Below, piece by piece: positions 9,116 to 61,920 of a stretch of 64,000 nt of DNA (positions are counted from its first letter, which is position 1; each line of letters starts with the position of its first letter). Made by a program: the position numbers and the translations under genes. The notes beneath the pieces were generated by a model that did not search any database, was not told the origin of the DNA, and saw only the letters and a list, made by a program, of their open reading frames with translations. The stretch spans positions 146,327 through 210,326 of IMG/VR virus record IMGVR_UViG_3300010430_000003; one strand, given 5' to 3'.

Positions 9116-9302
9116 ATTTTTTAAAATGCCTAAAGAAGATTTGAGGACGAAAGCAATTATATTTAAGCATGGATTGATAATTATCATATGAACAGTAAAC
9201 ATCTTTCATTGAATAACATTCCAACGGTTCAAAGGGATAGGTAGGATGCCACCAATACCATATTAATCGGTTAGCAAGAATAGTATTAATATTTGAATTC
9301 AT
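9105..9302 (-). CDS. MNIN-family micro-ORF
   Basis: MNSNINTILANRLIW. Confidence 0.7.
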   Translation of the reverse strand: MNSNINTILANRLIWYWWHPTYPFEPLECYSMKDVYCSYDNYQSMLKYNCFRPQIFFRHFKKYGY

Positions 9303-9534
9303 TGATTTTCAACATATAATGTTCATACCATCTTTTTAACCACCGTTCACCACAATTAATAGGATCAGTATATTCTCTAAAAAATATCAAGAAGTGACTT
9401 CTACCTTTTCTTGGGTGACTTTCATAACCGACACCGGGAAAATTTCTATCACCTAAATTAAAATTGGGATTGCTAGGTGAATATAATTCCAAATATATTC
9501 GGCAGGCTAGAAGTTGATTGATGTTGGAATTCAT
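9286..9534 (-). CDS. MNIN-family micro-ORF
   Basis: MNSNINQLLACRIYL. Confidence 0.7.
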   Translation of the reverse strand: MNSNINQLLACRIYLELYSPSNPNFNLGDRNFPGVGYESHPRKGRSHFLIFFREYTDPINCGERWLKRWYEHYMLKINEFKY

Positions 9535-9540
9535 CGAATT

Positions 9541-9762
9541 TCAATTAGGGGAATGAAAAACAAAACAATAGTTAGGAATTGACCATATTGGTCCATCTTC
9601 ATAAACCCACGCATATGTTTCATTCCCTTCCATTATAAAGGAATCATATTGATATGTGATTTTAAAATCATGCCATGAAAACCATGTAGTTAAAAACTTT
9701 GCGGCAATGGCATAATTAATTTCTTGCGAGGTTGGATTATACTTTGGAAAGATGTTATACAT
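9541..9762 (-). CDS. MNIN-family micro-ORF with N-terminal extension
   Basis: ...SQEINYAIAAKFL. Confidence 0.55.
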   Translation of the reverse strand: MYNIFPKYNPTSQEINYAIAAKFLTTWFSWHDFKITYQYDSFIMEGNETYAWVYEDGPIWSIPNYCFVFHSPN

Positions 9763-9837
9763 CTGAACAAATCAGAATGATATAACAATTCCACAATTCT
9801 TTAACCCACTCATGTTCTTGAGGTGTTAAATCTTTCA

Positions 9838-10209
9838 TTATACTTCCGTAAGATTGCACATAATATCTTCTGCGAATCGCTTGTTGGAAATTACACTACA
9901 AATTTCAGTAATCTCATCACAAAAAACATCAAAAGCCTCTTCTCCTTCTTCCCAAAGATTGAGGAGAAGTTGGCTTGCTTCATTCCCAACAGATCGTGTG
10001 GGCCAAGCAATATCGTATGCTTCTAGGTGATCATGACCTTCATTCGCCGCATCAACAATAATTCGAGCAATGAGTTTAACATCGTCGAGCGATTTAATTC
10101 CAAATTCAAACGCTTCTACAGAACTTTTGTCTTGAATAGAATACGTTCCAAACTCCATATAAATGGGGAAAATATAATCAAGATATTCTTGTGTAGTTTT
10201 GATTTTCAC
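9838..10209 (-). CDS. hypothetical protein
   Basis: 123-aa acidic ORF. Confidence 0.55.
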   Translation of the reverse strand: MKIKTTQEYLDYIFPIYMEFGTYSIQDKSSVEAFEFGIKSLDDVKLIARIIVDAANEGHDHLEAYDIAWPTRSVGNEASQLLLNLWEEGEEAFDVFCDEITEICSVISNKRFAEDIMCNLTEV

Positions 10210-10390
10210 TTATTATTCCTCGCAGTTTCGTTTTGAGAAAATTAATCCAATTTGAATGCCAATTAATAGTTTCTATTGCTTGATAATATTCCCATGCGCA
10301 ATAACGCCGAGATTTCAGGTCAATATCATAATACTCTCCATCTCTAAAAAGCATAATAGCAATATATTGATTAATCATGGTGTCATTCAT
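10178..10390 (-). CDS. MNIN-family micro-ORF
   Basis: MNDTMINQYIAIMLF. Confidence 0.65.
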   Translation of the reverse strand: MNDTMINQYIAIMLFRDGEYYDIDLKSRRYCAWEYYQAIETINWHSNWINFLKTKLRGIISENQNYTRIS

Positions 10391-10391
10391 G

Positions 10392-10845: not shown

Positions 10846-10919
10846 TGGATATCAACTGAGGGTTTCGAACCTTCATCCTCCCCATCACAGGGCACTTTAC
10901 CACTTAAGTTAAGTTGATA
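10846..10919 (-). tRNA. tRNA-His(GTG)-like RNA with shortened anticodon arm (pseudo-tRNA or mimic)
   Basis: TATCAACT/AGTTGATA acceptor, D-arm ACTT-AAGTGGTA-AAGT, loop CTGTGAT with only a 2-3 bp stem, T-arm GAAGG-TTCGAAA-CCCTC, then TCCA. Confidence 0.6.
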
Positions 10920-11249: not shown

Positions 11250-11276
11250 AGTTGACAAGAAACTTGAGCTTGCTAT

Positions 11277-12648: not shown

Positions 12649-12676
12649 ATTATACTGTTTTCTGTACAGAATTCAA
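12649..12676 (-). promoter_or_regulatory. sigma70-like promoter TTGAAT-N16-TATAAT with palindrome TCTGTACAGA in the spacer
   Basis: Read directly; compare TCTGCACAGA in the 7715-7742 promoter. Confidence 0.6.
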
Positions 12677-12891
12677 GAACAGTATTTTATCAAACGGTGT
12701 AATGTATCGTCTTTAATAATTCTCGCCCACTCGTTTTGGTCTTTAATGTGAATTGAGGCGAACTTAAATCTTGTGTAAGGTCTTACCTTATCACTTTCGA
12801 GATGGGAGAAAATTCCGTAGAACTGGAAGACTTCGGAATAATAAAAATCTGCAAGAATATATCCTCTTGCTATTTGATTGACATTCATCAT
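12673..12891 (-). CDS. MNIN-family micro-ORF
   Basis: MMNVNQIARGYILADF. Confidence 0.65.
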   Translation of the reverse strand: MMNVNQIARGYILADFYYSEVFQFYGIFSHLESDKVRPYTRFKFASIHIKDQNEWARIIKDDTLHRLIKYCS

Positions 12892-13094
12892 CTTCTCTTT
12901 ACAATGGTGAGGTCTTTCGAATCAAAGAAAGGTATGGTTCCATATAATCTTTTAATCATTTCTTCATAATCTACACTGCGAACTGAAAAGGAAATTCTAT
13001 CACAGTTTAGATGATTTGTAAAACTATATAAAATTTGAGGTTCTGCCATAAGAATAAATCTGGCGATTTGCACGTTAATTTTAACAGCATTCAT
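12888..13094 (-). CDS. MNIN-family micro-ORF
   Basis: MNAVKINVQIARFIL. Confidence 0.65.
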   Translation of the reverse strand: MNAVKINVQIARFILMAEPQILYSFTNHLNCDRISFSVRSVDYEEMIKRLYGTIPFFDSKDLTIVKRR

Positions 13095-13528
13095 ACTTTA
13101 ATCTTTTCTGCTGCTCTATGAATTCTCTCCTCAAGATGATCATGGTCTTCATCTAAATCAAGAATAATTCCTTCTAATTCCTTCTTCTTTGTTCTCAACC
13201 TCTTTATTTCTTTTGCCCTTCGATCAAGAAGAATTGTGCGATACCACATATCCCTTTTTGGAACATAAACTTCTTTTTCTTCACCATCAATGAATCTTAT
13301 TGTATGGGTATGAGGAATGACTTCTTCGATTTTTTCCCATTTGTAATAATTACATGTTTTTTGTTTCTTTGTTTGCTGAATATCCCAAACAGGCGAATCA
13401 TGATCAAGATCAGCTATAGCAACTTCCATATCTTTTTGCCAAAGATATTCAATTATGGAGTAATTGAATAAAATAGATAATCCAAGCGCAGCGGCGAAAA
13501 CTGCAATTATGGCTATAATGAATAACAT
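13091..13528 (-). CDS. membrane-anchored hypothetical protein
   Basis: N-terminal TM helix, C-terminal coiled coil. Confidence 0.6.
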   Translation of the reverse strand: MLFIIAIIAVFAAALGLSILFNYSIIEYLWQKDMEVAIADLDHDSPVWDIQQTKKQKTCNYYKWEKIEEVIPHTHTIRFIDGEEKEVYVPKRDMWYRTILLDRRAKEIKRLRTKKKELEGIILDLDEDHDHLEERIHRAAEKIKV

Positions 13529-13536
13529 TTATACCC

Positions 13537-13956
13537 TTAATGGTTTGGGAAATCATTTAAATTGAAATCTTTAAAATCAACTAAATCTAAAGAAGAAATA
13601 GACACTTTTTTATTCAATGGTTTTCTCATTCGATTTCCACGTTTATCATATAAAACACGAACTTCCACAATTTGTTCTTTATCATTTGTACAGGTATACC
13701 ACCAATGCTGATTTTGTCTTACATAAGCTTCCCCAAACCATCTTGCTTTATGGTTACTTCTAACCTCTTGACCCCACACTAAAGGTTTGTGTGGAATCCT
13801 TTTCAGAGAGGAAACAGCATAACTTAATTCAGATTCTATATCATGTGATATGAGAGTGTATTGGAATTCGCATGACCGATTATTTGAAACCCACCTTTCT
13901 CCAAGAAATCCTCTTTCATACATTAAAAATGTATACGCAACCTTTTTATTAATCAT
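13537..13956 (-). CDS. MNIN-family member with extended C-terminus (139 aa)
   Basis: MINKKVAYTFL. Confidence 0.55.
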   Translation of the reverse strand: MINKKVAYTFLMYERGFLGERWVSNNRSCEFQYTLISHDIESELSYAVSSLKRIPHKPLVWGQEVRSNHKARWFGEAYVRQNQHWWYTCTNDKEQIVEVRVLYDKRGNRMRKPLNKKVSISSLDLVDFKDFNLNDFPNH

Positions 13957-14147
13957 TTAAATTTAATCAATTTTGAAGAACTGTGTGTTAAAAATGTATG
14001 TACATTTTTATACATAATGTCAGACATATACTTACGAGTAAGAGTTGTATGACTAATTGTCAATCTACCGGGACTTGGAGTTGACGACCAAATATATTCC
14101 CACTCTGATGAGATCATCATGAAAGCCACTTGAAAATTAATTTTCAT
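13953..14147 (-). CDS. MNIN-family micro-ORF
   Basis: MKINFQVAFMMI. Confidence 0.65.
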   Translation of the reverse strand: MKINFQVAFMMISSEWEYIWSSTPSPGRLTISHTTLTRKYMSDIMYKNVHTFLTHSSSKLIKFK

Positions 14148-14346
14148 TTTGAGTCAATCTCAAATTATTTGTATATTCTTGCATAAAATGCATCATATAT
14201 ATCTCGAAAAAGGTAGAGGAATGATTAGTGTAGAGAAAAGAAATAGAGTGCTCCAAAAAGAGCTTTGAACCAGCCATCGCTACATTATGATGATTCGAAT
14301 GAAATGTTATAGAATACATTACTTTTATTCGAATTATCTTATTCAT
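14137..14346 (-). CDS. MNIN-family-like micro-ORF
   Basis: MNKIIRIKVMYSI; same composition and coupling, motif weak. Confidence 0.45.
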   Translation of the reverse strand: MNKIIRIKVMYSITFHSNHHNVAMAGSKLFLEHSISFLYTNHSSTFFEIYMMHFMQEYTNNLRLTQNEN

Positions 14347-15884: not shown

Positions 15885-16121
15885 TTAATGAAAAGCTTTA
15901 TAAGAAAGCTCGCAGAAAAGACCTTTATGAGTACAATGATACATGGTGGGTTTTTTAAGTTTATTCATCATCTTTATTCTTGAAGATCTGTCACATAGAT
16001 ACTTGGAATGAATTTCAAATGAATGATGTTTGATCAATCCGAAGTGCGTGAAATGGTTCCAATCAAAATCGTCATGCATGAAAAACCCTGCAATCATTAA
16101 ATTAATGTAATTCATTATCAA
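15885..16121 (-). CDS. MNIN-family micro-ORF (DFDW subgroup)
   Basis: INLMIAGFFMHDDFDWNHF. Confidence 0.7.
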   Translation of the reverse strand: MIMNYINLMIAGFFMHDDFDWNHFTHFGLIKHHSFEIHSKYLCDRSSRIKMMNKLKKPTMYHCTHKGLFCELSYKAFH

Positions 16122-16305
16122 ACTGTCTCATTGCATGGATGCAAACTCTAATTGAACTGTGCAAATATCCCTCATACCATTCAATAAATGTTGTATATCG
16201 ATGATCTGATATACAAGAACCTTCTCTAGCAGAGTTGTTCTTAATATCAGGAAGTTCGTAATCTAATACAAAACAATTGGAGACCAACAAGTTAATGTGA
16301 TTCAT
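16102..16305 (-). CDS. MNIN-family micro-ORF
   Basis: MNHINLLVSNCFVLDY. Confidence 0.7.
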   Translation of the reverse strand: MNHINLLVSNCFVLDYELPDIKNNSAREGSCISDHRYTTFIEWYEGYLHSSIRVCIHAMRQFDNELH

Positions 16306-16508
16306 AACCCTTTAAATAAAACTTCATGTTTTGGATATTTATCTTTTATAAAGGAATACATTGAGAACTTTTCAGGCATTAGATACAAGCTTTCTCTTTG
16401 AGAAAAAGGTATAACCTCCTTATTGACACGGAAGTGAATCCAATCAAAATCATAATTTATAAAATATATACTTATCATTAAATTGATATTATCAATCTTG
16501 GCTTTCAT
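16302..16508 (-). CDS. MNIN-family micro-ORF (DFDW subgroup)
   Basis: ATG at 16508, MKAKIDNINLMISIYFINYDFDWIHF. Confidence 0.7.
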   Translation of the reverse strand: MKAKIDNINLMISIYFINYDFDWIHFRVNKEVIPFSQRESLYLMPEKFSMYSFIKDKYPKHEVLFKGL

Positions 16509-16815
16509 TGTCCCTCCATGGCAAAGGGTCAAATGTAGCCCAAGGTCTTTCCGCTTTAAGCAGCTCGTGAAGTTCTTCAGTATTTTGTTCAGCAATTTCC
16601 CTTGCCACCTTTAAGTCTTTTTCCAAGACCTTGATTCTGATTCCAGAAGATTGTTTATATTTGTTGTAATCATTTTCAATTTCATTGTGAACTCGAATCA
16701 TTTCATGCCAATTAACGACGGCAGCAACAAAATGCCCTCTCAATTCATCCTCAGACATATTATTAGCATCATTTTGAGTTTCTTTTAATAACTTGTCATA
16801 TTCTTCATCAGTCAT
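16492..16815 (-). CDS. coiled-coil hypothetical protein
   Basis: 107-aa helical ORF. Confidence 0.55.
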   Translation of the reverse strand: MTDEEYDKLLKETQNDANNMSEDELRGHFVAAVVNWHEMIRVHNEIENDYNKYKQSSGIRIKVLEKDLKVAREIAEQNTEELHELLKAERPWATFDPLPWRDNESQD

Positions 16816-18171: not shown

Positions 18172-19000
18172 TTATAACCTTTAAACCATCTTTCAAACCA
18201 TGTTGGTTGACGATCATGCCAACGAACCTCTATTTTAGAGATCTCATTAGGTTCCCACAATGTTTTATATATTTCTTTATAAGTCAAATTAACAGAATCA
18301 ACTCTCCACACAGGAATCTTAAGATAAGCCCCAAGAATTTCAAACATCTCTTCTTTGGAAAAGATTAGAATAGATTTCTGTTTAACCAAATAATATTTCT
18401 GTGGCAACTGAGAAGTCGGTCTGGGATCAAGAAATTTGAGTTTCTCGTGAGGGCCAAACATTGTTTTAAAATCACTTGTGCTTAGATATTCTTTTTGTAA
18501 AGTAACCATCATTCACCGATATTCAGAATCATGCCAGAACAGTTCAATATATTCCTCGTATTTATCTTTGTGAAGATATTTGCGAAGATTGGCTTTTCCT
18601 TTAGCCCTATCCCTCTTCACCCTTCCCCGCTTGTAACATTTTATGGATTTGCGTGTATGAGGACTCACTAATCGCTGCCCCCACCACCTACAAAGAACAG
18701 TAAGAGTGATAAAATTCCAAACCACCAAGACAATTCAATATTAAAGAAAACGATTGGTTCTCCATATAACCACATAATCATCCATCCAATGGCAAATCCG
18801 ATGGCAAATCTAATGGCGTACATTACAGCGGCAAAAAGGAGAACCGTAAGAAAAGCACCAACCCCGAAAAGTACTGCAAGAACAGGTGTGAAGTAAGGCT
18901 TCAGAAAATCATAACTGCGTTGATACCAAGTTCTAATGTGGTGCATAATTGTTATTCCTTTGAAAGAAGAATATAAGGTTTTCATAGTAAGTATTTCCAC
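18168..19000 (-). CDS. three hypothetical ORFs (18168-18512, 18513-18728, 18668-19000 multi-TM)
   Basis: ORF track; the last is strongly hydrophobic. Confidence 0.5.
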
Positions 19001-19157
19001 TCGCCGTAAAGTTTTTAACTATTGTTTCATAATAAATTGCAGAGTTTCTAAACTTATCATTTGATACGAACATTTTATCTGCTGTCAGGCGATGCCAGTT
19101 GCAAATGTAAAGGACATAGGTTCGTGCTATGATGATATTAATATCGTTTGATTCCAT
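18933..19157 (-). CDS. MNIN-family micro-ORF
   Basis: MESNDINIIIARTYV. Confidence 0.7.
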   Translation of the reverse strand: MESNDINIIIARTYVLYICNWHRLTADKMFVSNDKFRNSAIYYETIVKNFTASGNTYYENLIFFFQRNNNYAPH

Positions 19158-19353
19158 TTAATTTAGCCAGCAGTGATTTGTTTTTATTTCTCAATAACAG
19201 TGAAATATTGTGCTTTATATATTGAGGATATCTTTGGAGTTTCTTCAAAGCGGGACATGTCTTTCTTGAAAAGCCATGGGAACCATTTTTGTAAATCTTA
19301 TGACAACCGCTATATAGAAAAATATGAGCAACAAAAATATTAATATTATTCAT
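19138..19353 (-). CDS. MNIN-family micro-ORF
   Basis: MNNINIFVAHIFL. Confidence 0.7.
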   Translation of the reverse strand: MNNINIFVAHIFLYSGCHKIYKNGSHGFSRKTCPALKKLQRYPQYIKHNISLLLRNKNKSLLAKLNGIKRY

Positions 19354-23286: not shown

Positions 23287-26200
23287 ATGGGTGGTCTCGC
23301 TGGTCGTATCAAATATCTTTATGAAGGTGATTTAACCTTCAAAGAACTTAAAACTATTCTTGAAAATATTTCATTAAGTCACCTTCCTCTTTATGAAAAA
23401 GTGGATGGATTTAATTGCTATTTTTCTTGCAGAAGAGGTATGCCTGTAATGGCTCGAAATCTGACCGAAGCACGGTCAGGTGGTTTATCCATCATTGAAC
23501 TATCAAATCGAGAATTTAAAGGTGGCAAGAAAGTAAAGAAGGTTTTTATTGAAGCCCTCAAAAATTTCTCCAAAGATTTCAGACTCTTAGATAAGAAAAT
23601 TTTTGAAAGCGATGGGAATCAAGTTTTTTATAATTTTGAAATCGTTGACAAAAATACGAATCGTTTGTTTGAATATGATAGTAACGGTCTTGTCTTGCAC
23701 AACTCTGGTCATTTCTGCATTGTTGAAAATAATAAACATTTTGTCAATGGCGATGGTTTTAGAACAGGAACTATCGGAACCAAATATATTAAGCATAATT
23801 TCAAAACCTCTCTTAGAGAAAATTCATATTTTGATGGAAGTTCATTCATACAAAGAATTGATGAAGTAATGCAATCAGTTGGATTGTCTGAACTCAATTC
23901 AATTTCAGAATTGAAAGAGCAAGAGAGACTCAAAAAGATTCTTAATGAGTTTTCTAATAATTTAATAAACTCTCTTAAAAGTAATTTTGTTGACAGTCAA
24001 GAAGAAAAAGTAACTCAATTCAAAGATCGAGTCAAAGAAGCTGTTGATTGTCTCCTTGAATATTCAGGTCCAAATCGAGCACAGGTCGTTGAAAAAACTA
24101 TTCATTATTTAAATCAATTCCCTGCCATTGACTCAATCAACTCATGCATTGAAGGGGTTGTTTTTGAACATAATGGCGAAATGTATAAAATGACTGGTTA
24201 TTATAGACCAATAAATCAACTTTATGGCTTTTATCAAAAGACGCTAAAGGAATTCGATTCAGGTCGAATGTATCCCATTGAGCCAAGCTCTTATAATGTT
24301 GACGGTGTTTTGACACATCCTCAAGAAAAAACCATTGCAATCTTTCCTGGAAGTTTTAAACCGCCTCATGCGGGACATTATCGAATCATTGAGGAATTGA
24401 AAAAACTCAAAACTCCTGATGGTTTTCATATTTGTAATAAGATAATCATTTTAATTTCTAATAAGGCTAGAATGGCTCAATCTGATTCGAAAACGACATA
24501 TGTCACCGCTGAGATTGCTAAGGAGCTTTGGGATCTCTATGTGTCAAATGAAGATGCTCAAACTCGAATTGAAGTCCGAGTTGCAGATCACGACACTCCA
24601 ATTAAGTGTGTTTATGATATCATGCTTAATGAAATGTCTCCCGGCGAAACTTTGATGTTGGTCAAATCAGATAAAGACGCAAATTCAGATCGATTTAATG
24701 CTTTTTCAGATTTCTCGGATGAATATGACCTCGGTGTTAAGGTTATTGCAAAAGAAATGAATATCTTCTCTGCGGGAATTTCAGCTTCAAATATGCGAAA
24801 CTGGATTGCTGATGGAGATGAGGATAGGTTCAAGGGCTTCCTCCCAGATCACTTATCGTCAGAAGACCGCGCTCGTGGTTGGGAAATTGTTACCGGCGAA
24901 CAAGACGTTTCGTTATCGGAAGACGACTCTTTTTTTTTAAGTGAAGGGTATGACGCTCTTCTTGAAGGAGAAGGTGATAAACGTCTAAAGAGTGCCCTCC
25001 GGAAGAACCCAGATTATAAAGAACAAATTGAAGCTCTTGCTGCAGCTGATCCTTCCGGCAAAGGAAGGAAGCTTTTGCCTTGGATGGTTCGTGAGCTTGT
25101 GAAGTTTGATGGCGGGCGAACAAATGATATTATTGCTGTGATATCATTGTTTTGGCAATATCGGCAACGCTTTAAAGCAGCTTCCTATTCAACCGATGTT
25201 TTTTCATATTCCTTTGAAGAAATGTTGACTCTCCTTAAGAAATTAAGACTCACTCCTCGTTTTGATAAAATTAAGTCTCCTCTTCGAACATCCAATTATC
25301 CCGGTTCTTCTGTTGTGTATGAGGAAGAAGACTTTGCTGTGATCCGACCATATACCTTTGAAGCTTCATGCTATTTTGGAGAAGAGGGAAATTGGTGCAT
25401 CTCCACTGATGAGGGTCATTGGAATGACTATGTCGGAAATGAATCTGTTCATTATATCTTAATTAATGATTCAATTAAATTTGAAGAAGATGCTGATTCA
25501 AAAATTGATTTTGTTGTAAGACATGGTACAGTCATGGAGCTGTGGGATAAAGAAAATACTTCTCTTGATGAAGATTATGTGGAAGAGCTTCTTGGAGAAG
25601 AACTCTATAACAAAATTGAACAAGCAATTTTAACAGATTATGAACGTGATCCTGATAATGAAGAAACAGGTAATCGCAAAGAGTGGATTGAACTTCAATC
25701 TGAAATCGAAGCTGATTGGGATGATCGAAAATATATCACATGTGAGATATATGAATATGATTCGAATCAATTCCAGCTTCAAGCTTGGATTAATATTGAC
25801 TTCGATGAAACGAATATAAAATTAAAACCGCAAGAACGCTCTTGGCAAGCGTCTCAAAAATTTTCTCATGCAATTGAAGCAATTATTGATTATACAATCG
25901 AAGATGTTGAAGTTGATGGGAATACAATTCGTGGTAGAATATACCTTGATGATGTATTTACCCCTGATGACGCACAATATAGTTGGGAGCAATTAACAGA
26001 AAAAGATGATTATCTTCAAGGTGATGATCCCGATGACAACATTCGAGCCGTTGTTTATTCACTGTGGGAATATGATTTAATTGAAGGTGAAACAGAAAGT
26101 AAAATAGAAATCATCAAAAAGATTGATGAGCATGAGTTCAGATATCTTTTCGCCGATTTTGATGAAGATGAAGGGTTATCGGTTCAATTTACTCTCCACG

Positions 26201-32807: not shown

Positions 32808-33038
32808 TCATCCCGCTCCTCTTTTAATTTCTCTTAAATCCAAAAGACACACCCACAAAAGAAAATTCTCTATACAATATTCTCCAAAAACAATCAATTC
32901 TTCATGTTCGTAAGATTCTATCACAGATTGTTTGGGGTCTATTTCCCATATTTTGGGGTTATTAATATCAACAGTGAAGTTTTGATTATATTGAAGAACA
33001 AAACTAGCCTTCACCATTTTATTAACAAATGAATTCAT
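32808..33038 (-). CDS. MNIN-family micro-ORF (KAxFVxQ subgroup)
   Basis: MNSFVNKMVKASFVLQY. Confidence 0.7.
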   Translation of the reverse strand: MNSFVNKMVKASFVLQYNQNFTVDINNPKIWEIDPKQSVIESYEHEELIVFGEYCIENFLLWVCLLDLREIKRGAG

Positions 33039-33247
33039 TTATGTTCATTGGAGAATGATAAGTAGTAGTAGTTTACATCTTCTATACATCCAGAAATAAC
33101 ATGTTTTGAATATTCAAGTATAGATGCCATACTTGAATATAGCGCTACGGAATAGTGCTTTCCTGGTATGGACGTCCATAAGAACCGACCATGTTGACGA
33201 ACAAAGCCAGCTTTAATCAGATTATTTATTGTTGAATGTGAATTCAT
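33035..33247 (-). CDS. MNIN-family micro-ORF (KAxFVxQ subgroup)
   Basis: MNSHSTINNLIKAGFVRQH; the A of ATG is the tRNA discriminator base. Confidence 0.7.
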   Translation of the reverse strand: MNSHSTINNLIKAGFVRQHGRFLWTSIPGKHYSVALYSSMASILEYSKHVISGCIEDVNYYYLSFSNEHK

Positions 33248-33330
33248 AGCGGGAGAGGGATTCGAACCCTCGAAGCCTTAACGGCAAAAGGTTATGAGCC
33301 TTTTCACTTTAACCACTTGTATATCCCGCA
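33247..33330 (-). tRNA. tRNA with CAT anticodon (Met or Ile2) and long variable arm
   Basis: Acceptor TGCGGGA/TCCCGCT (U1-U72 mismatch), D-loop AAGTGGTTAAA, AAAGG-CTCATAA-CCTTT, V-arm GCC-GTTAA-GGC, GAGGG-TTCGAAT-CCCTC; no encoded CCA. Confidence 0.85.
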
Positions 33331-41191: not shown

Positions 41192-41882
41192 ATGAGTGAC
41201 GGAGATTGCATACACACATCCTCTTATGGTTATTGCCAACATAAAGATTGTACACATTATGGAATTCAGTGGTCAACAGGAACAACTTCAAACAATTGGC
41301 CTTTGACAATGGATAGTTCATATCTATATCCGTTTTATAATCCATATTATACGACCTTTAACTATAATGGAGTTCCAAATGAAATTGCAGATATGATTCA
41401 AAGAGTGGGAACAGAAAAAGTTAAACACTTTCTTGAGAAAGAACTTGAGAAGATTCAAAAAGAAATAGAGGAAGAAGATGAGTGAGCATGCTATAAATAA
41501 CGTATTACAGATTTTCACGACAAATCAGGAAGGTGTTGTTGCAATGACAACTTTTGATGGTGGAGAAACTTCTGAAGAATTCATGAAGAATTATGATTAT
41601 TCTCTCAAGAAACTTATTACGGTTGGAGAATTTGAAGTTTTAAAAGAAAACAAAGAAACATATTTACCACACGCAGTTTTTGGTCGAAGCAAAACTCCTG
41701 AAGTTTGGGAACCTTTTGTTGAGAAGGATTTGGAGCATTACAGCAATACAAAGATTGATCGTACTTATGTGATTGTGAGATGTTTCGAGAAGACTGACGA
41801 AGAAAAGTATCTTCCCATTCATGTTGACGTTGAAGATCATATTAAAATGCCTCAAATGGTTAAACATATTGAAGACTCATGA
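41192..41882 (+). CDS. two hypothetical ORFs (41192-41485, 41478-41882)
   Basis: ORF track, co-oriented. Confidence 0.55.
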
Positions 41883-42724
41883 AACTTTTATATATAGCTG
41901 ACTTCTTTTATCCTGAATCATTGGGGGGTGCCGAACAGTCTGATTTTGAACTTTTGAACATTCTTGCTGATGAAGGTTTTTTGATCAATAAAATTCGTTC
42001 AACAGATTTATCAGAAGAACAAGTTGAAAAGCACAAAGACGAACTTTGGTTTATCTCGAATTTTATGGGTTTGAGAAAGGTGGTAAAAGATTCAATTGTT
42101 GAATTGGTCAAGGATTATGTTATTGTCGAACATGACCACAAGTATCTCTATCACCGAGATCCCTCACCCCATCCAGATTATACTGCTCCCAAGCATGAAT
42201 TAGTTAATGTTGAATTATATCAGGGTGCAAAATATATTATAGTTCAGTCGAACCTTCATGACGAGATCATTCACAAAAATCTTGACAATATAACAACATA
42301 TAAGGTTGGTGGAAATCTTTGGACAGATGAATTACTGGAAAAAATAAAATCTCTGCCACCACCCCCCGATAATGGTGTAGCTTCCATTATGGTATCTGGC
42401 ATTGATCACAAGAATACCAAAGGCGCAGTTAGATATTGTCAGCACAAAGATATCGATTATGAATTGATAAGTCCTTGTGCTCCTGAATTGTTTTTTGAGA
42501 TGATTTCCAAAAATGAATATTTCTTGTTTTTGCCACAATGTGTTGAGACTCTTTCAAGGATTGTTGTCGAGGCAAAGATGCTTGGAGTTAAGGTTATAAC
42601 CAACAATAAGATTGGAGCGGCCTCTGAATCTTGGTTTAAAGAACTTCGCGGTGATGATTTGATTGACTATATGATGAATGATAAAAAGGAGGAGATTCGT
42701 GAATTCATCAGAGAGTTATATTAA
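41879..42724 (+). CDS. GT-B-like glycosyltransferase
   Basis: LGGAEQSD; ETLSRIVVEAKMLGVKVI. Confidence 0.75.
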   Translation: MKLLYIADFFYPESLGGAEQSDFELLNILADEGFLINKIRSTDLSEEQVEKHKDELWFISNFMGLRKVVKDSIVELVKDYVIVEHDHKYLYHRDPSPHPDYTAPKHELVNVELYQGAKYIIVQSNLHDEIIHKNLDNITTYKVGGNLWTDELLEKIKSLPPPPDNGVASIMVSGIDHKNTKGAVRYCQHKDIDYELISPCAPELFFEMISKNEYFLFLPQCVETLSRIVVEAKMLGVKVITNNKIGAASESWFKELRGDDLIDYMMNDKKEEIREFIRELY

Positions 42725-42965
42725 TCTTTTTTTAATGAATAAGCTTTATAGTTGTTTTTCACGGAGTACAACATATGAACAAGTTCATTTCATAAGTATG
42801 AATGGCTGTCCCCATCTACTTGGGGTTCTCCCGAATCTTTACGCACGCCTTAGAGATTACGGAGTGAAGATAAAATCCTCTTTTGCTCTTTTAAATATGA
42901 AAGGAAGTAATCTTCCACGGCATATTCAAAAATTCAAGGAAGAAATGAGGAGTTTATGTGATTAA
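42699..42965 (+). CDS. MNIN-family micro-ORF
   Basis: GTG at 42699, MNSSESYINLFLMNKLY; upstream GT stop lies inside ATT AAT. Confidence 0.6.
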   Translation: MNSSESYINLFLMNKLYSCFSRSTTYEQVHFISMNGCPHLLGVLPNLYARLRDYGVKIKSSFALLNMKGSNLPRHIQKFKEEMRSLCD

Positions 42966-45772: not shown

Positions 45773-46036
45773 ATGCAGCTAAAGCCAATTAATATGTGGA
45801 GTTTTTTTAATACTGCTCAAGACACAAGACTGACAGGAATTTTAATGTCAGGACATTCAGTTATTACAACTGATATTTCTTTTATATGGGGTCGATTTGT
45901 GCAGACAAGGAATTCTGTATATTTTTTGGAAGAAGTGGACCCAACATATTTATCAATTCTAGATTTACCTAAAAATTGTGAAGACATAAGGGTAATCTGC
46001 GCCGCCATTACTAACCCCAAATTTGAAATCTTATGA
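45773..46036 (+). CDS. hypothetical protein
   Basis: 87-aa ORF; MQLKPINMW only weakly family-like. Confidence 0.5.
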   Translation: MQLKPINMWSFFNTAQDTRLTGILMSGHSVITTDISFIWGRFVQTRNSVYFLEEVDPTYLSILDLPKNCEDIRVICAAITNPKFEIL

Positions 46037-46263
46037 ATTCATCCCTTATAAACGAAAATATTGCCCTTTGTTTGATTGATTCTAATTTTCAAGATATTAA
46101 GGATCCAGCTTACCGTTACCCTAACATACATTACGTTCGAAATGTTCCTCGCAGCTCAAAAGCTAATCCTTCTTGGATGCGAGCAAGAGGTGTTTTGTCG
46201 ACATGGGCTAGATGGTATTTGAATGAAGATGATAGTTCTCTTCTTAAAAGAGGAAAGATATGA
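46033..46263 (+). CDS. MNIN-family micro-ORF
   Basis: MNSSLINENIALCLI; ATGA overlaps at both ends. Confidence 0.65.
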   Translation: MNSSLINENIALCLIDSNFQDIKDPAYRYPNIHYVRNVPRSSKANPSWMRARGVLSTWARWYLNEDDSSLLKRGKI

Positions 46264-55545: not shown

Positions 55546-56763
55546 GTGAAGAAGATACATGATTTGAATACAATACGTGGATGGCATTATGAGGGTAAGA
55601 AAAGACTTTCCCGCAAGAAGCGTAAAATCATTGCCATGATTCCTGCCCGTTTAGGCTCACAGAGAATCCCAAAAAAGAATGTTAGATATCTTCACAACAA
55701 ACCATTAGTACAGTGGATTATTGATGCTGCTAAAGAATCTGGTATTTTTGATGAAATCTGGCTTAACACTGAAGATGATGGGTTGTTAGCTAAGATTGCC
55801 AAAGAATCAGACATCAAATTCTATTTGCGGGATATCAGCCTAGCAACTGATGGCGCAACCAACGATCAATTCTTAATGGACTTTGTTAAATCACGAAAAC
55901 TAAGAGATGAAGATTATATTGTTCAACTGCTTCCAACCTCACCTTTTATTAAGCCTGAAACTATTTCTGATTTCACAGAAGAATTGTTGGCAGTTGATAC
56001 GTTGATTTCTGTTGTCGAACACAAAATTGAATGTCTTAATTCTAAAATGGAGCCATTGAATTTCGATGTTCTTGATGACACTCTCCCTTCTCAGGATCTG
56101 AGACCTGTTTATTCATATGCGTGTGGGCTAATGGGGTGGAATGTTCTTTCATTAAAAGAAATTTATAATGAGGGTTGTTCTCCATATCACTCATATCATT
56201 CAAGAAAGGAAGTCTTCATTCTTGGGAATGAAGAGGCAATTGATGTTGACACTGAATCAGATTTTCAATTTGCGGAAAGTGTTGCTATGTCAATGCATTA
56301 TGATGAAATTAAGCCTCGATATTATGGAGAATATTCATCTGTTGAATATGATGTGAAACCTCTTCTTGAAAAAGACGGCATTAAAAGAACAGAAGCTTGG
56401 ACAACATCACCGTCAGTATTAAAACGGGTTAATGTGACAAGGATGGTGGAAGCGATGCCTGATTCATACGCTAAAACTCTTGTGAACTCTCCGTTCAATA
56501 GTGCAACTCTGATCCGGCAGAATGACGGGGAAGGAAATAGAAAACACTCACATAGTAACTGGGCTGAATGGTGGTTGATTCAGGAAGGTAAATGTGTGTT
56601 TGAATATTGGGAAAAAGAGAATAGAAGCTCACGAGCAATGGTATTGATTACTGGCGACCTGCTATACATCCCAGCAGGCATAGAACATAAGATCACCGCG
56701 AAGGGTGGGCCATGCACAAGATTGGCTGTATCTCGTTATGATGTGGCACATTTTTATAAATGA
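55546..56763 (+). CDS. acylneuraminate-type cytidylyltransferase (NeuA/KdsB-like) fused to a C-terminal cupin
   Basis: IPARLGSQRIPKKN, LLPTSPF, IDVDTESDF; HSHSNWAEWW...GDLLYIPAGIEH. Confidence 0.85.
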   Translation: MKKIHDLNTIRGWHYEGKKRLSRKKRKIIAMIPARLGSQRIPKKNVRYLHNKPLVQWIIDAAKESGIFDEIWLNTEDDGLLAKIAKESDIKFYLRDISLATDGATNDQFLMDFVKSRKLRDEDYIVQLLPTSPFIKPETISDFTEELLAVDTLISVVEHKIECLNSKMEPLNFDVLDDTLPSQDLRPVYSYACGLMGWNVLSLKEIYNEGCSPYHSYHSRKEVFILGNEEAIDVDTESDFQFAESVAMSMHYDEIKPRYYGEYSSVEYDVKPLLEKDGIKRTEAWTTSPSVLKRVNVTRMVEAMPDSYAKTLVNSPFNSATLIRQNDGEGNRKHSHSNWAEWWLIQEGKCVFEYWEKENRSSRAMVLITGDLLYIPAGIEHKITAKGGPCTRLAVSRYDVAHFYK

Positions 56764-56957
56764 CTGGTTTGATTAATTTAATAGTTAGACAAAAATTCGT
56801 TTATTCTATTAACGTGAGAGAAAATGGGTGGCCTCTCTCTCGTCATAATTGGGATTATCGAGAGTTTGACGATTATGAAGTATATTATGATATCTCTAAT
56901 GTTAAAATGTGGAAAGTGATCATTAAACAGAAGATTCATTCATATGAATTATCATGA
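56760..56957 (+). CDS. MNIN-family micro-ORF
   Basis: MTGLINLIVRQKFV; ATGA overlap. Confidence 0.65.
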   Translation: MTGLINLIVRQKFVYSINVRENGWPLSRHNWDYREFDDYEVYYDISNVKMWKVIIKQKIHSYELS

Positions 56958-57133
56958 ATATCAACCTTTCCATAGCTGAAAAGATTCTATATACCTACTC
57001 ACCATGGCCCTCTCACTACTATTATTTTTGTTATGATGCTGATGATTTTTCAAGAATAGGAACATTTGATAGTTTTCGACATAGTAGAGTTAGAGTCTAT
57101 AATCACCTACAATTAATGAAACGTTATGTATAA
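56954..57133 (+). CDS. MNIN-family micro-ORF (59 aa, not in ORF track)
   Basis: Hand-translated MNINLSIAEKILYTY...QLMKRYV; overlaps both neighbours. Confidence 0.7.
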   Translation: MNINLSIAEKILYTYSPWPSHYYYFCYDADDFSRIGTFDSFRHSRVRVYNHLQLMKRYV

Positions 57134-58911: not shown

Positions 58912-59482
58912 GTTAGATTTAGATAACATGGAACAAAAATTTCATGACTGTCTTGAGACAGAAGATTGGGCGCGTTTTGTTGAGATGTTTAAAGCCGCTA
59001 CAGAAATTTATATTATTGGAAATGGTGGACAAGCATCCACAGCGCAACATGCAGCCTCAGACACAACTCGTTTAGTTGATAACAAGATTATTCGCTCTTT
59101 TGATAACATGAGTTATCTTACGTCTGTTGCTAATGATTATGGATATGAAACAGTCTTCCAACGTTGGATTGAGAAAGAAATCGGAAACACTTCTAGAGAT
59201 AAAGTGATGGTTATTGGTTTATCTTGTTCTGGCAACTCTCCTAACATTGTTGATGTTTTGGAATGGGCTGATCATCAGGGAATTAAAAGCGCCCTAATTT
59301 CAGGCACAAAATCGGTCAAGCTATCTCCACACATTAATGAAGTATGTATGTATACAAAGTACTTTCATTCATCAGAGCTTATTTCAATGCTTTTGATTTA
59401 TGAAGCTATTGGTGAGTGCGGTGGTCGATGCCCAACATTAGTTGAAGAAAATATTCGCAAGGGTTTTGATACGGATGAATAG
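58904..59482 (+). CDS. SIS-domain sugar phosphate isomerase (GmhA-like)
   Basis: IGNGGQASTAQH, LTSVANDYGY, SCSGNSPNI. Confidence 0.85.
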   Translation: MSKLDLDNMEQKFHDCLETEDWARFVEMFKAATEIYIIGNGGQASTAQHAASDTTRLVDNKIIRSFDNMSYLTSVANDYGYETVFQRWIEKEIGNTSRDKVMVIGLSCSGNSPNIVDVLEWADHQGIKSALISGTKSVKLSPHINEVCMYTKYFHSSELISMLLIYEAIGECGGRCPTLVEENIRKGFDTDE

Positions 59483-59690
59483 AATTCTTAGTGTTGATAA
59501 GAATCTTATTCTTGCTGACCGTTTTTTAGCAAATATTATTGAGGAAGATGATTTATTCTTCTCTATGATAATGCAGAAAGGCAGGGGCAGTGTTGCAGAA
59601 TATGATTTCTGGAATGACACAAAACAGTTTCATCATTTTTTGAAGATTGAGAGTGAATATAAAAGGAGATATCTCGATGTCTATTTATAA
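59442..59690 (+). CDS. hypothetical ORF
   Basis: Fills the gap between the SIS gene and fcl. Confidence 0.4.
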   Translation: MKKIFARVLIRMNRILSVDKNLILADRFLANIIEEDDLFFSMIMQKGRGSVAEYDFWNDTKQFHHFLKIESEYKRRYLDVYL

Positions 59691-60672
59691 TAATGTTTTA
59701 GTTTTGGGCGGCACTGGCTTTCTTGGCAAAAATTTGCAAAAAGTACGCCCTGATTGGATTTATGTCGGTAGGACTTCTTTTGTAGAAAATGGCATTGAAT
59801 GTTCTCTGGAGGACTTAAAAACTGCTTATGTTGGTAATGAAACTGATTATACCGATATTCATACTGTGGGTAATTTAATTGGTGTGTTTAATCCCGATGC
59901 AGTGATTAATCTTGCCGGTGATGTTGGAGGTATTGCTTACAACAATGTTAATCAACTCTCAATTTTTGAGAACAACATCATGATGAATACAAATATCATC
60001 AAGGTATGTCGAGAGTTGGAGATTGAAAGGGTCTTAAGTTGTCTGAGTACGTGTGCTTTTCCAGATTGTACACCAGCTTGTCCTATGAGTGAAGATGATT
60101 TATTTTGGGCTAGTGATCAATGGCAAGATACTCAAAACGCGCATCCATATAAAGGACACACAGGTTATGGTTGGGCTAAGAGAATGCTTCATATTCACAC
60201 AGAATTGGCAAGGGAAGCAGAATATAACTATTCAACATTCGCCCCGTCTAATTTATATGGTCCGCACGATCATATGGGAGAAATTGCTTCTCATTTTGTG
60301 GCAGCGTTAATTCACAAAGTTCACAAAGCGAAAGACGAGTTAAGATTGTATGGTGATGGAAAAGCACTGCGCCAGTTTCTATATGCCCCAGACCTCGCTG
60401 GTCTAATTCCCACCTTACTGGAAAAACATAATAGTGGTTCTCCATTGATTGTTGCACCCGAAGAAAACCTTTCAATTGATGAAATGGCAAGAATTGCTCT
60501 TAAAGTTGTTGAAAAAGATGTGAAGATTAAATATAGTGGAGAACATGCTGGACAGCATCGAAAAGACTGTTCAAACTCCCGACTTAAAAAGTTACTAAAT
60601 GATGATGTAATCTTCACTTCATTTGAAGAGGGATTCCGCGAAACATATAATTGGTATTTGGAGAATAAATGA
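59677..60672 (+). CDS. fcl: GDP-L-fucose synthase
   Basis: LGGTGFLG, NLAGDVGGI, LSTCAFP, YGWAKR, PSNLYGPHD, GDGKALRQFLY. Confidence 0.9.
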   Translation: MSIYNNVLVLGGTGFLGKNLQKVRPDWIYVGRTSFVENGIECSLEDLKTAYVGNETDYTDIHTVGNLIGVFNPDAVINLAGDVGGIAYNNVNQLSIFENNIMMNTNIIKVCRELEIERVLSCLSTCAFPDCTPACPMSEDDLFWASDQWQDTQNAHPYKGHTGYGWAKRMLHIHTELAREAEYNYSTFAPSNLYGPHDHMGEIASHFVAALIHKVHKAKDELRLYGDGKALRQFLYAPDLAGLIPTLLEKHNSGSPLIVAPEENLSIDEMARIALKVVEKDVKIKYSGEHAGQHRKDCSNSRLKKLLNDDVIFTSFEEGFRETYNWYLENK

Positions 60673-61730
60673 CATATAGAACACAGAAGGTTGCTGTAGT
60701 TTCCGGAGCAACTGGACAAACAGGAAGTTATTTGATTGACCTTCTTCTTGAAAGAGGTTATTATGTTATCGGTCTGAAAAGGCGAACATCGTTGATTTCA
60801 ACTGATCGAATCGATCATCAAATGAATAATAAAAATTTTAAGATGGTATATTATTCTTCTTTTGATCCCACAGTTACATATAGAATTATTCAAGAGTATC
60901 AACCTGATGAAGTATATAATATGGCATGTCAAAGTCATGTCAAAGTCAGTTTCGAAACTCCACAAGAAACCATGGATTCAATTATTCATGGTTGTTTATA
61001 TTGGCTTGAAGCAATTCGTATCTTAAATCCAAGAACAAAATTTTATCAAGCTAGTTCATCAGAAATGTTTGGCAGAAACACAGAGGTTCCTCTTAACGAG
61101 AAATCTGTTATGTTGCCCGCTTCACCTTATGCCTGTGCAAAATTGGCAGCGCATCACTTGGTTCAGAATTATAGAGAATCATATAATTTGTTTGCTGTGT
61201 CTGGGATTTTATTCAATCATGAAGGCCCCCGAAGAGGAGAAACCTTTGTCACAAGGAAAGTGACAAAGGCTGCCGCCAAAATTAAACTCAACCTTCAAAA
61301 ACAATTGGTGCTCGGTAATTTGGACGCTAAACGAGATTGGGGCTTCGCAGGTGACTATGCGGACGTGATTTGGAGAATGCTCCAGATTTCAAATGCTCAA
61401 GATTATGTTGTTGCAACTGGTGAGACACACACTGTTAGAGAGTGGGTTGAAGAAGTGTTTAAACATGCTGGTATGGAGATTGAGTGGCGAGGAATTGGTC
61501 TTGAGGAAAAAGGTTATATTAATGATGTGGAAACTATAGTGATAAGTGAGATGTATTACAGACCACAAGAAGTGCCCGTTCTCCTCGGAGACCCAAATAA
61601 GGCTTATAGAGATTTACAGTGGGATCCGAAAGTGAAGTTTTCAGATTTAGCGCAAATGATGTATAAAGCAGATTATGGTGAAGTTTTAGAGGAGAATGGA
61701 GGTTGGATTGAAGCATCCTTCTTTGATTAA
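60669..61730 (+). CDS. gmd: GDP-mannose 4,6-dehydratase
   Basis: GATGQTGSYL, QSHVKVSFETP, YQASSSEMFG, SPYACAK, GILFNHEGPRRGETFVTRK, GNLDAKRDWG. Confidence 0.97.
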   Translation: MTYRTQKVAVVSGATGQTGSYLIDLLLERGYYVIGLKRRTSLISTDRIDHQMNNKNFKMVYYSSFDPTVTYRIIQEYQPDEVYNMACQSHVKVSFETPQETMDSIIHGCLYWLEAIRILNPRTKFYQASSSEMFGRNTEVPLNEKSVMLPASPYACAKLAAHHLVQNYRESYNLFAVSGILFNHEGPRRGETFVTRKVTKAAAKIKLNLQKQLVLGNLDAKRDWGFAGDYADVIWRMLQISNAQDYVVATGETHTVREWVEEVFKHAGMEIEWRGIGLEEKGYINDVETIVISEMYYRPQEVPVLLGDPNKAYRDLQWDPKVKFSDLAQMMYKADYGEVLEENGGWIEASFFD

Positions 61731-61920
61731 TTTATGTATTAAAACTCATTTTTGTTATGCGGTATCAATAAGATTCTATAGTTCGTTTAAATATCGACTT
61801 TCCAATGTTAATAGTAAAATTATCACAAGACATACTTTTCAAAGAAACTATCACTTTTATGCTCATGAAGAAGAAATGATGAATTCCGTGCTTTCGCTAA
61901 TGAAAAAACATAAAACATAA
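61708..61920 (+). CDS. MNIN-family micro-ORF
   Basis: TTG at 61708, MKHPSLINLCIKTHF; gmd stop lies inside ATT AAT. Confidence 0.6.
   Translation: MKHPSLINLCIKTHFCYAVSIRFYSSFKYRLSNVNSKIITRHTFQRNYHFYAHEEEMMNSVLSLMKKHKT

What the first reader, a model, noticed from the sequence alone, without database searches (positions are those of the whole stretch)
9285..61731. Upstream stop codons repeatedly fall inside the family's Ile-Asn codon pair (AT|TAA|T)
Seen: in six junctions the upstream TAA lies within ATT AAT of the member's conserved IN: 9285-9290, 14136-14141, 16101-16106, 19137-19142, 42720-42725 (a glycosyltransferase stop) and 61726-61731 (the gmd stop). Most other members use ATGA/GTGA/TTGA overlaps (464, 1280, 1447, 1608, 1778, 1951, 5030, 12891, 13956, 16305, 33038, 46033, 56760, 56954). 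Inference: the 5' end ATGAAT...ATTAAT offers two built-in stop codons, so a module can join any upstream gene by microhomology at its stop and be translationally coupled at once. This suggests a spreading mechanism that needs no RBS or promoter.
Basis: partly seen in the sequence, partly recalled or inferred. Interest (0 to 1): 0.68.

Follow-up and report, generated by a model that had tools for sequence, protein, structure and literature searches.

The report
Stop codons inside small-gene starts
In this 210-kb marine-sediment phage, about 88 tiny related genes are packed so tightly that the preceding gene often ends inside their first codons, but this follows from AT-rich codon usage and ordinary gene packing and is not evidence of a special way of spreading.

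Summary
All six junctions are at the stated coordinates. I found a seventh in the window (9104-9109) and four more elsewhere in the genome.

The window is the last 64 kb of a complete 210,326-bp T4-like phage from marine sediment. The "family" is real: about 88 ORFs, median 67 aa, basic. They share an N-terminal motif (M-N-x-I-N-x-x-I-A-x-x-F) and have no detectable relatives outside this phage.

The stop-in-Ile-Asn geometry is not special to the family:
- Overlaps in that frame occur in 26% of family genes and 25% of non-family genes (p=0.89).
- The first stop in that frame lies a median 17 nt into both kinds of gene.
- The motif's Ile is ATT in 54% of members, the same as Ile-Asn pairs in other genes (53%).
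- The member's own family-type ATG lies 5' of the TAA, so the DNA joint cannot be at that TAA.

What does distinguish the family is more ATGA overlaps (39% vs 14%), few gaps, and few Shine-Dalgarno-like sites. This fits translational coupling.

The closest paralogs are neighbours, which points to tandem duplication. No recent copies exist, and other samples are identical, so filled/empty sites could not be compared.

The parts
1..2136 (+). 3' part of the largest tandem array of family genes (genome 143,339-148,462). In-window members: 44-247, 240-467, 464-661, 654-950, 1086-1283, 1280-1450, 1447-1611, 1608-1781, 1778-1954, 1951-2136. Most are joined by ATGA/GTGA, and two by 8-nt overlaps.
8930..9115 (-). 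Family member (MDINK...). The upstream member's TAA lies inside its ATT AAT at 9104-9109.
9105..9302 (-). Family member (MNSNIN...). Junction 9285-9290: the TAA of 9286-9534 lies inside its I-N codons, giving a 17-nt overlap.
9286..9534 (-). Family member upstream of 9105-9302. Its last five residues are read from the downstream member's 5' codons in another frame.
13953..14147 (-). Family member (MKIN...). Junction 14136-14141, 11-nt overlap.
14137..14346 (-). Unverified small ORF (69 aa, MNKIIRIK...) whose TAA falls in the I-N of 13953-14147. Possibly a degenerate member.
   Evidence: no Pfam hit
15885..16115 (-). Family member with start ATG at 16115 and the best profile score. Junction 16101-16106, 14-nt overlap.
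16102..16305 (-). Family member. Upstream partner of 16115, and itself joined by ATGA to 16302-16508.
16302..16508 (-). Family member (MKAKIDNIN...). Overlaps the upstream non-family gene 16492-16815 by 17 nt; that gene's stop is a TGA outside the I-N pair.
18933..19157 (-). Family member (MESNDIN...). Junction 19137-19142, 20-nt overlap.
19138..19353 (-). Family member (MNNIN...). Here the upstream gene's TAA falls in AAT AAT (8-nt overlap), not in the I-N pair.
12673..14147 (-). Run of members 12673-12891, 12888-13094, (non-family 13091-13528), 13537-13956 and 13953-14147, all joined by ATGA.
32808..33247 (-). Two members, 33035-33247 and 32808-33038, joined by ATGA. The first begins on the last base of a tRNA-Met gene.
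33247..33330 (-). tRNA-Met (CAT). It abuts a family member.
41879..42724 (+). Non-family gene (281 aa, no Pfam hit). Its TAA lies in ATT AAT at 42720-42725.
42699..42965 (+). Weak or degenerate family member (GTG start, VNSSESYIN...), not called by JGI.
46033..46263 (+). Single family member inside the sugar-biosynthesis cluster, with ATGA overlaps at both ends.
56760..57133 (+). Two members, 56760-56957 and 56954-57133, between a cytidylyltransferase gene and an aminotransferase gene. Joints are ATGA, ATGA, then an 8-nt overlap with the next gene.
60669..61730 (+). GDP-mannose 4,6-dehydratase. It has 14 residues beyond the last position aligned to solved homologues, against 5-7 in the two shown. 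By coordinates, its last 7-11 codons are read from the member's 5' region.
61696..61920 (+). Family member (start ATG 61696 or TTG 61708). Junction 61726-61731.
61932..62120 (+). Family member (MKQNSLIN...), 11 nt after the previous member.

Best explanation
The window belongs to a complete T4-like phage that carries about 88 copies of a fast-evolving small-protein family found nowhere else so far. The proteins are roughly 67 aa, basic, and predicted to form a two-helix hairpin. They share a conserved N-terminal motif.

The genes grew mainly by local tandem duplication and then diverged (shown). They sit in long co-directional runs with almost no spacer and usually no Shine-Dalgarno site (shown). 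They are therefore most likely translated by termination-reinitiation from the gene in front (inferred).

The 'TAA inside Ile-Asn' junctions are a by-product. In this 35% GC genome Ile is mostly ATT and Asn mostly AAT. Almost any gene therefore has an off-frame stop within about 17 nt of its start. When the upstream gene has no stop of its own before the next start, it runs on to the first off-frame stop inside the next gene. That stop is ATGA in one frame. In the other frame it is the first xxT-AAx codon pair, which in about a third of members is the conserved I-N.

[quoted passage not shown] It needs no special joining mechanism.
For: Identity of the genome.
- 210,326 bp, direct terminal repeats, rated 100% complete.
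- Baseplate wedge, large terminase, portal and GroEL; gp21-type prohead protease.
- The nearest cultured-phage terminase is 37% identical.

The family is real.
- 88 curated members, or 59 by profile.
- The open frame runs a median 67 codons, against 8-12 in the other two frames.
- Full-length similarity exists within sub-clusters.
- AlphaFold2 on one 58-aa member gives a helical hairpin, pLDDT 77.

Geometry is not family-specific.
- Overlaps of 8, 11, 14... nt: 23/88 family vs 59/237 others, p=0.89. This holds under two other start-picking rules.
- JGI's own gene calls show such overlaps among enzyme genes.
- The first stop in that frame lies a median 17 nt in for both groups; 66% vs 63% have one within 20 nt.
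- ATT at the motif's Ile in 34/63 (54%) vs ATTAAY in 53% of Ile-Asn pairs in other genes.
- 10 of the 30 members whose I-N pair is the first stop in that frame are actually used. That is the one-third expected from random frames.

Coupling.
- ATGA 39% vs 14% (p=4e-6); gaps 25% vs 54%.
- SD-like 4-mers 23% vs 49-64%, with 12.5% at random positions.

Tandem origin.
- 14 of 19 significant paralog pairs lie within 1.2 kb, against a 4.7% background (p=3e-15).
- The best pair is 49% identical and adjacent.

Literature.
- Overlaps arise mainly by 3' elongation to the next stop, and long overlaps mostly fall in one phase, which by my reading of their definitions is this one (PMC3887535).
- ATGA/TGATG pairs are translationally coupled (PMC6728339).
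Against: - ATGA junctions are about three times as frequent in family genes as in others. They remain more frequent among ATGA-capable starts: about 34/72 vs 33/122 (derived). Something beyond composition favours flush joints. I attribute this to selection for coupling and to inheritance of joints in tandem duplications, but neither was tested.
- Single members sit inside unrelated enzyme operons (46033, 56760/56954, 61708). They got there somehow, and no data show how.
- My gene calls are home-made, so the starts of non-family genes are uncertain.
- No expression or ribosome data exist for this phage (one search found no RNA runs).
Confidence: 0.72

Rival explanations
1. The module's 5' end (ATGAAT...ATTAAT) lets it join any upstream gene by microhomology at that gene's TGA or TAA. 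This would be a way of spreading that needs neither RBS nor promoter.
For: - Members are flush with upstream genes far more often than other genes are.
- They mostly lack SD-like sites.
- Single copies lie between unrelated sugar-pathway genes.
Against: - The TAA class is equally common in non-family genes.
- There is no ATT enrichment at the motif.
- The member's own ATG and family-type codons lie 5' of the TAA, so the joint cannot be at the TAA (sequence logic).
- The 3' ends overlap the next gene just as often.
- There are no recent copies, and the nearest paralogs are neighbours.
- No polymorphism was found in five other data sets.
Confidence: 0.06
2. The conserved 5' coding motif acts as a short patch of homology. 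It is 18-44 nt long and 80-94% identical between some members. The phage's recombination system would use it for unequal crossing-over and module shuffling, as a coding-sequence counterpart of the PeSL cassettes of T4-type phages. Arrays would expand and contract while keeping their joints.
For: - Nucleotide similarity between members is confined to the first 18-44 nt.
- Members form tandem arrays with repeated joint types.
- Recombination between short conserved cassettes shuffles ORFans in T4-type phages (PMC2839356; PMC4122927).
Against: - Synonymous codons in the motif vary as in the rest of the genome, so there is no sign of ongoing homogenisation.
- No array-length variants appeared in contigs from four runs.
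- No sequence is conserved upstream of the ATG.
- This model is compatible with the best explanation rather than opposed to it.
Confidence: 0.15
3. The small ORFs are not genes. The repeated 5' motif would be a DNA or RNA signal, and the open frames would be chance.
For: - Coding scores are low (2-12).
- Amino-acid composition is odd, rich in C, H, M, Y, W and R.
- No homologues were found anywhere.
Against: - Frames stay open for a median 67 codons, against 8-12 in the other frames; only 3% of off-frame runs reach 45 codons.
- Conservation starts exactly at the ATG, with nothing conserved upstream.
- Later positions are also conserved, and paralogs are similar over their full length.
- The length range is narrow.
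- JGI's gene caller calls them.
Confidence: 0.04

Closest known systems
[quoted passage not shown]
   Same: The upstream ORF ends at the first off-frame stop inside the next gene. Overlap lengths follow where that stop happens to lie. Long overlaps mostly fall in one phase, which by my reading of the paper's definitions is the phase seen here.
   Different: Here the density is very high: 75% of family genes and 46% of other genes overlap their upstream neighbour. The downstream sequence is a conserved motif, so the same codon pair recurs.
Translational coupling by termination-reinitiation at ATGA/TGATG pairs (PMC6728339, PMC10666635)
   Same: Co-directional pairs with -4 and -1 overlaps, and downstream genes often without their own SD.
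   Different: Coupling is untested here. The runs are much longer, up to about 9-10 consecutive overlapping small ORFs in the largest array.
PeSL cassettes that mediate modular shuffling of ORFans in T4-type phages (PMC2839356, PMC4122927)
   Same: A T4-like genome with plastic regions full of small ORFans, and a short conserved sequence at the head of each module.
   Different: PeSLs are intergenic promoter-plus-terminator cassettes. Here nothing is conserved upstream of the ATG, the conserved stretch is coding, and no shuffling events could be observed.
T4 internal proteins with an N-terminal capsid targeting sequence (PMC3012670, found; details from my own knowledge)
   Same: Small basic proteins of a T4-like phage that share only a short N-terminal segment. 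The phage encodes a gp21-type prohead protease.
   Different: There are about 88 copies rather than three. The T4-type (L/I)xE cleavage motif is not enriched. No virion data exist.

Membership tests
Same-strand overlaps by 3' extension to the next stop | The upstream stop is the first in-frame stop inside the downstream gene, and its position distribution matches that of off-frame stops in general | tested here: met
   The first stop in that frame lies a median 17 nt in for both family and non-family genes. Overlap-class frequencies are 26% vs 25%.
Same-strand overlaps by 3' extension to the next stop | The upstream protein carries extra C-terminal residues relative to its homologues | tested here: inconclusive
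   gmd has 14 residues after the last position aligned to solved homologues, against 5-7 in the two shown. This lies within the normal length spread (335-381 aa), and only one gene was tested.
Translational coupling (termination-reinitiation) | Co-directional pair with a -4 or -1 overlap or a very short distance | tested here: met
   38 of 88 family junctions are -4 or -1, and 66 of 88 overlap.
Translational coupling (termination-reinitiation) | Downstream translation depends on upstream translation | not testable with these tools
   No RNA or ribosome data for this phage.
PeSL-type mobile regulatory cassettes | A conserved intergenic cassette (sigma-70-like promoter plus stem-loop) flanking the modules | tested here: not met
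   Base composition from -25 to -1 of members is at background level. 75% of members have no intergenic space at all.
PeSL-type mobile regulatory cassettes | Indels between close relatives have end-points in the cassette | not testable with these tools
   Only identical copies of the phage were found. The nearest other phages share 42-43% terminase or ATPase identity and lack the family.
T4 internal proteins with a capsid targeting sequence | A short shared N-terminal segment on otherwise unrelated small basic proteins | tested here: met
   Motif; median pI 9.1.
T4 internal proteins with a capsid targeting sequence | (L/I)xE cleavage site after the targeting segment | tested here: not met
   17/87 members have it in the first 30 aa, against 18.8 +/- 3.6 in shuffles.
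T4 internal proteins with a capsid targeting sequence | Presence in the virion and processing by the prohead protease | not testable with these tools
   The protease gene is present (PF03420, E 9.5e-31), but there is no proteome.
RiPP precursor families (shared leader, variable core) | A modifying enzyme encoded in the genome | tested here: inconclusive
   No radical SAM domain in the genome. Other enzyme classes were not searched. The predicted helical hairpin spans the whole protein.

The most novel reading that the evidence does not exclude
The roughly 88 hairpin proteins are one phage's private arsenal. This is a hypervariable set of small basic proteins whose shared N-terminal dodecapeptide serves as a common address or handle. 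It could direct them into the T4-like prohead or to one shared partner. The proteins would be made as long ribosome-coupled trains, sometimes directly behind tRNA genes. The conserved 5' coding stretch would double as the recombination patch that lets arrays grow and seed single copies into other operons.
Probability: 0.12. Interest if true: 0.7.

Novelty: new member of a known kind. Interest (0 to 1): 0.33.

Why it matters
The junction pattern itself matters little. It shows how a conserved AT-rich N-terminal motif can make ordinary overlap formation look like a designed feature.

The gene family underneath is worth keeping. It makes up 27% of the genes and 9% of the DNA of a complete 210-kb phage, and a search of 1.84 billion representative proteins found no relative. 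The genes are packed in SD-poor overlapping runs.

If the phage or its host were cultured, it would be a natural system for two questions. One is how far termination-reinitiation can carry expression along a chain of short ORFs. The other is what such an expanded set of small basic proteins does during infection.

Tried and rejected
- **Megablast of 42 kb of the window against 50,697 phage records:** no match.
- **Pfam and PHROGs on members:** nothing.
- **Word-indexed protein search with the 67-member alignment:** none at E <= 0.01.
- **Full HMMER scan of 1.84 billion representatives:** only five of the phage's own members and one spurious repeat protein. Only 5 of about 88 own members passed, so this search has low sensitivity and absence of relatives is not proven.
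- **Family profile against five larger contigs of the nearest IMG/VR relatives and against L031:** nothing.
- **Degenerate DNA pattern for MNINIIIA in IMG/VR:** 12 hits, all chance.
- **Search for variants of the same phage:** ENA contig L032 (99.97% identical), JGI contigs L045-L047 and L030 (100%), and Logan contigs from four marine-sediment runs laid on the largest array. No indels or joints were found. This is contig-level and low-depth evidence, so rare variants could be missed.
- **Protein-language-model atlas:** no usable hit.
- **Foldseek against viral models:** nothing below E 2. A two-helix hairpin is uninformative in any case.
- **T4 (L/I)xE cleavage motif:** not enriched.
- **Radical SAM:** absent.
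- **Literature search for comparable phage multigene families:** nothing relevant.
- **Not done:** a second structure model, a fold search against PDB, and a complex prediction. I make no binding claim.

Full report
**What the window is**

The window is bases 146,327-210,326 of a single 210,326-bp virus record. The record has direct terminal repeats and is rated 100% complete. Every public run that holds it is a marine sediment metagenome.

The genome encodes a gp6-like baseplate wedge protein, large terminase, portal and GroEL. It also encodes a gp21-type prohead protease (PF03420, E 9.5e-31). It is therefore a distant T4-like myovirus.
- The nearest cultured-phage terminase is 37% identical (Flavobacterium phage immuto).
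- The nearest IMG/VR contigs are 42-43% identical.
- G+C is about 35%.
- The window also holds a sugar-nucleotide and glycosylation cluster. It includes gmd, epimerases, aminotransferases, a cytidylyltransferase, split transketolase, adenylosuccinate synthase, and a PIN-PhoH gene.

**The family**

It is roughly M-N-(0-4 residues)-[I/V]-N-x-x-[I/V]-A-x-x-[F/I/Y]-[L/I/V]. Weaker conserved aromatic positions follow later in the protein.

- A motif profile plus manual curation gives 88 members in the genome; 59 are recovered by a profile search. That search is circular in part, because the profile was built from them, and the invariant Asn was a selection criterion.
- Members make up 27% of my 327 gene calls and 8.9% of the DNA. 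All lie between 60 kb and the right end, with 44 between 140 and 160 kb.
- Median length is 67 aa and median pI 9.1, against 5.6 for other small proteins. C, H, M, Y, W and R are each 1.5-1.9 times as frequent as in other proteins.

They are genes rather than chance frames, for four reasons:
- The frame stays open for a median 67 codons, against 8-12 in the other two frames of the same DNA.
- Conservation begins exactly at the ATG, and nothing upstream is conserved.
- Sub-clusters are similar over their full length.
- JGI's pipeline calls them.

AlphaFold2 on one 58-aa member, using the 67-member alignment, gives a two-helix hairpin with pLDDT 77.

No relatives were found by Pfam, PHROGs, the word search, the full HMMER scan of 1.84 billion representatives, the atlas, or Foldseek. 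None were found in the nearest related contigs either. The big scan recovered only five of the phage's own members. Its sensitivity for such short, divergent proteins is therefore low, and absence elsewhere is suggested but not proven.

**Checking the observation**

All six junctions are exactly as described. Three carry caveats:
- 14137-14346 is an unverified ORF.
- The member at 42699-42965 is weak and was not called by JGI. Its upstream neighbour has no Pfam hit, so calling it a glycosyltransferase is unconfirmed.
- The starts at 42699 and at 61696/61708 are ambiguous.

I found a seventh case in the window (9104-9109). Four more lie at genome positions 125,772, 129,269, 145,425 and 146,012.

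**Is it more than chance?**

I called genes with a codon-usage model and tabulated every same-strand junction.

|---|---|---|---|---|
| Family (n=88) | 34 (39%) | 4 | 23 (26%) | 22 (25%) |
| Non-family (n=237) | 33 (14%) | 14 | 59 (25%) | 129 (54%) |

- ATGA is enriched in the family (p=4e-6) and gaps are depleted (p=2e-6).
- The result holds when non-family starts are re-picked without any SD term, or simply as the first ATG.
- JGI's independent calls show overlaps of 8, 11, 13, 14 and 17 nt among the enzyme genes.

The 'built-in TAA' is not a family property:
- The first stop in that frame lies a median 17 nt into both family and non-family genes. It lies within 20 nt in 66% and 63% respectively.
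- The motif's Ile is ATT in 34 of 63 members (54%). Ile-Asn pairs in other genes are ATTAAY in 53%, and ATT is 64% of all Ile codons. Nothing has favoured the stop-bearing codon.
- Of the 30 members whose I-N pair is the first stop in that frame, 10 are used by the upstream gene. That is the one-third expected if frames are random and the upstream ORF runs to the first stop.
- Thirteen other members have the upstream stop in that frame somewhere else, for example in AAT AAx.

**A logical point against a joint at the TAA**

In each of the seven in-window junctions except 42699 and 61696/61708, the codons 5' of the TAA are the family's own N-terminus: ATG AAT TCA AAT AT..., ATG AAT TAC AT..., ATG AAA AT..., ATG GAA TCA AAC GAT AT... 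and ATG GAT AT.... That DNA belongs to the module.

The boundary between upstream DNA and module must therefore lie at or before the ATG. The upstream ORF reads into the module, and its last 2-6 residues are dictated by the member's codons in another frame. A microhomology joint at the TAA would have removed the member's start.

For gmd, the alignment to solved homologues ends 14 residues before its stop, against 5-7 in the two homologues shown. By coordinates, the member's possible starts fall in gmd codons 343 and 347. This fits a short 3' extension, although it lies within normal length variation.

**What is distinctive**

Members are flush with whatever precedes them, and they mostly lack SD-like sequences. 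The frequency is 23%, against 49-64% for other genes depending on the start rule, and 12.5% at random positions. Other genes show a clear G peak at -10 to -7 that members lack.

Their 3' ends also overlap the next gene often: 57% of family-to-non-family junctions, against 44% for non-family pairs. Tight packing is thus a property of both ends, not of the 5' motif.

The most economical reading is translational coupling along runs of short ORFs, as shown experimentally for ATGA/TGATG pairs in other organisms (PMC6728339). That step is inferred here.

**How the family grew**

- Members are very diverged. The best pair is 49% identical in protein and is adjacent; all other pairs are 41% or less over their full length.
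- Nucleotide similarity between members is otherwise limited to the first 18-44 nt.
- Of 19 pairs with blastp E < 1e-3, 14 lie within 1.2 kb. Only 4.7% of all pairs are that close (p=3e-15).

Local tandem duplication followed by rapid divergence is therefore shown. Many ATGA joints in arrays may be inherited rather than independent events.

How the single copies reached the sugar cluster is unknown. Recombination between the short conserved 5' stretches would be a coding analogue of the PeSL cassettes of T4-type phages (PMC2839356, PMC4122927). It remains possible but has no direct support. Synonymous sites in the motif are not homogenised, and no array variants were seen.

Filled versus empty sites could not be compared. 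The only other occurrences are the same phage at 99.97-100% identity: one ENA contig, four JGI contigs, and Logan contigs from four runs laid on the 5.2-kb core of the largest array. None has an indel or joint. More distant relatives lack the family.

**Comparison with known systems**

- The junction geometry matches the general model of same-strand overlaps formed by 3' elongation to the next stop. By my reading of their phase definitions, that paper also notes that long overlaps mostly fall in this phase (PMC3887535).
- The PeSL membership test fails on its defining intergenic cassette.
- The resemblance to T4 internal proteins is suggestive: small, basic, only the N-terminus shared, and a gp21-type protease present. 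However, the (L/I)xE cleavage motif is not enriched.
- A RiPP-leader reading has no support so far. There is no radical SAM enzyme, though other enzyme classes were not searched.

**Verdict**

- The proposed joining mechanism is not supported, and for the TAA class it contradicts the sequence itself.
- The part of the inference about coupling without an RBS is plausible.
- The underlying expanded ORFan family is the more interesting object. Its function is unknown. My working guess is a set of small basic helical proteins, made in coupled trains, that act on host or phage nucleic acid or protein targets. This guess is low-confidence inference.

Noticed in passing
window 33247-33330 (-) and 33035-33247 (-); genome 119694-119767, 129490-129566, 134166-134238, 141493-141567: tRNA genes sit inside the family arrays.
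- The window's tRNA-Met shares its last base with the ATG of a member.
- tRNA-Leu is followed by a member after 1 nt.
- tRNA-Ile and a second tRNA-Met each have a member 5-6 nt before and 19 nt after.
- tRNA-Gln is followed by a weak member after 24 nt.

tRNA processing would leave these messages with little or no leader. In the window case it would cut into the start codon.
   Followed up: partly
window 10850-10918 (-): A second tRNA, found by Rfam (41.4 bits) but not by ARAGORN.
   Followed up: no
window 2001-4000: This stretch is 46.8% G+C against about 35% elsewhere. Its ORFs (2914-3561 +, 3016-3759 -, 3350-3799 +) overlap on both strands and have no Pfam hit. It may be foreign DNA or a non-coding element.
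   Followed up: partly
window 4815-5233 (-): Two adjacent ATGA-joined ORFs, 5027-5233 and 4815-5030. They share a variant N-terminus (...IYY[A/S]FVRSL...) that looks like a diverged sub-branch of the family.
   Followed up: no
window 23287-29118 (+): A 1,943-aa protein with no Pfam hit. It has weak PHROG matches that include a cytidyltransferase-like region at residues 346-550.
   Followed up: no
window 35667-36932 (+): PhoH-like ATPase fused to an N-terminal PIN domain.
   Followed up: no
genome 114124-114375 and 114362-115969: A family member overlaps the start of the phage GroEL gene by 14 nt.
   Followed up: no
genome 143339-148462 (window 1-2136 is its end): About 27 family ORFs in a row. 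Overlapping joints run uninterrupted for up to 9-10 genes. If translation is coupled, this is an unusually long reinitiation chain.
   Followed up: partly
genome 46937-47764: A patatin-like phospholipase gene lies among the structural genes.
   Followed up: no
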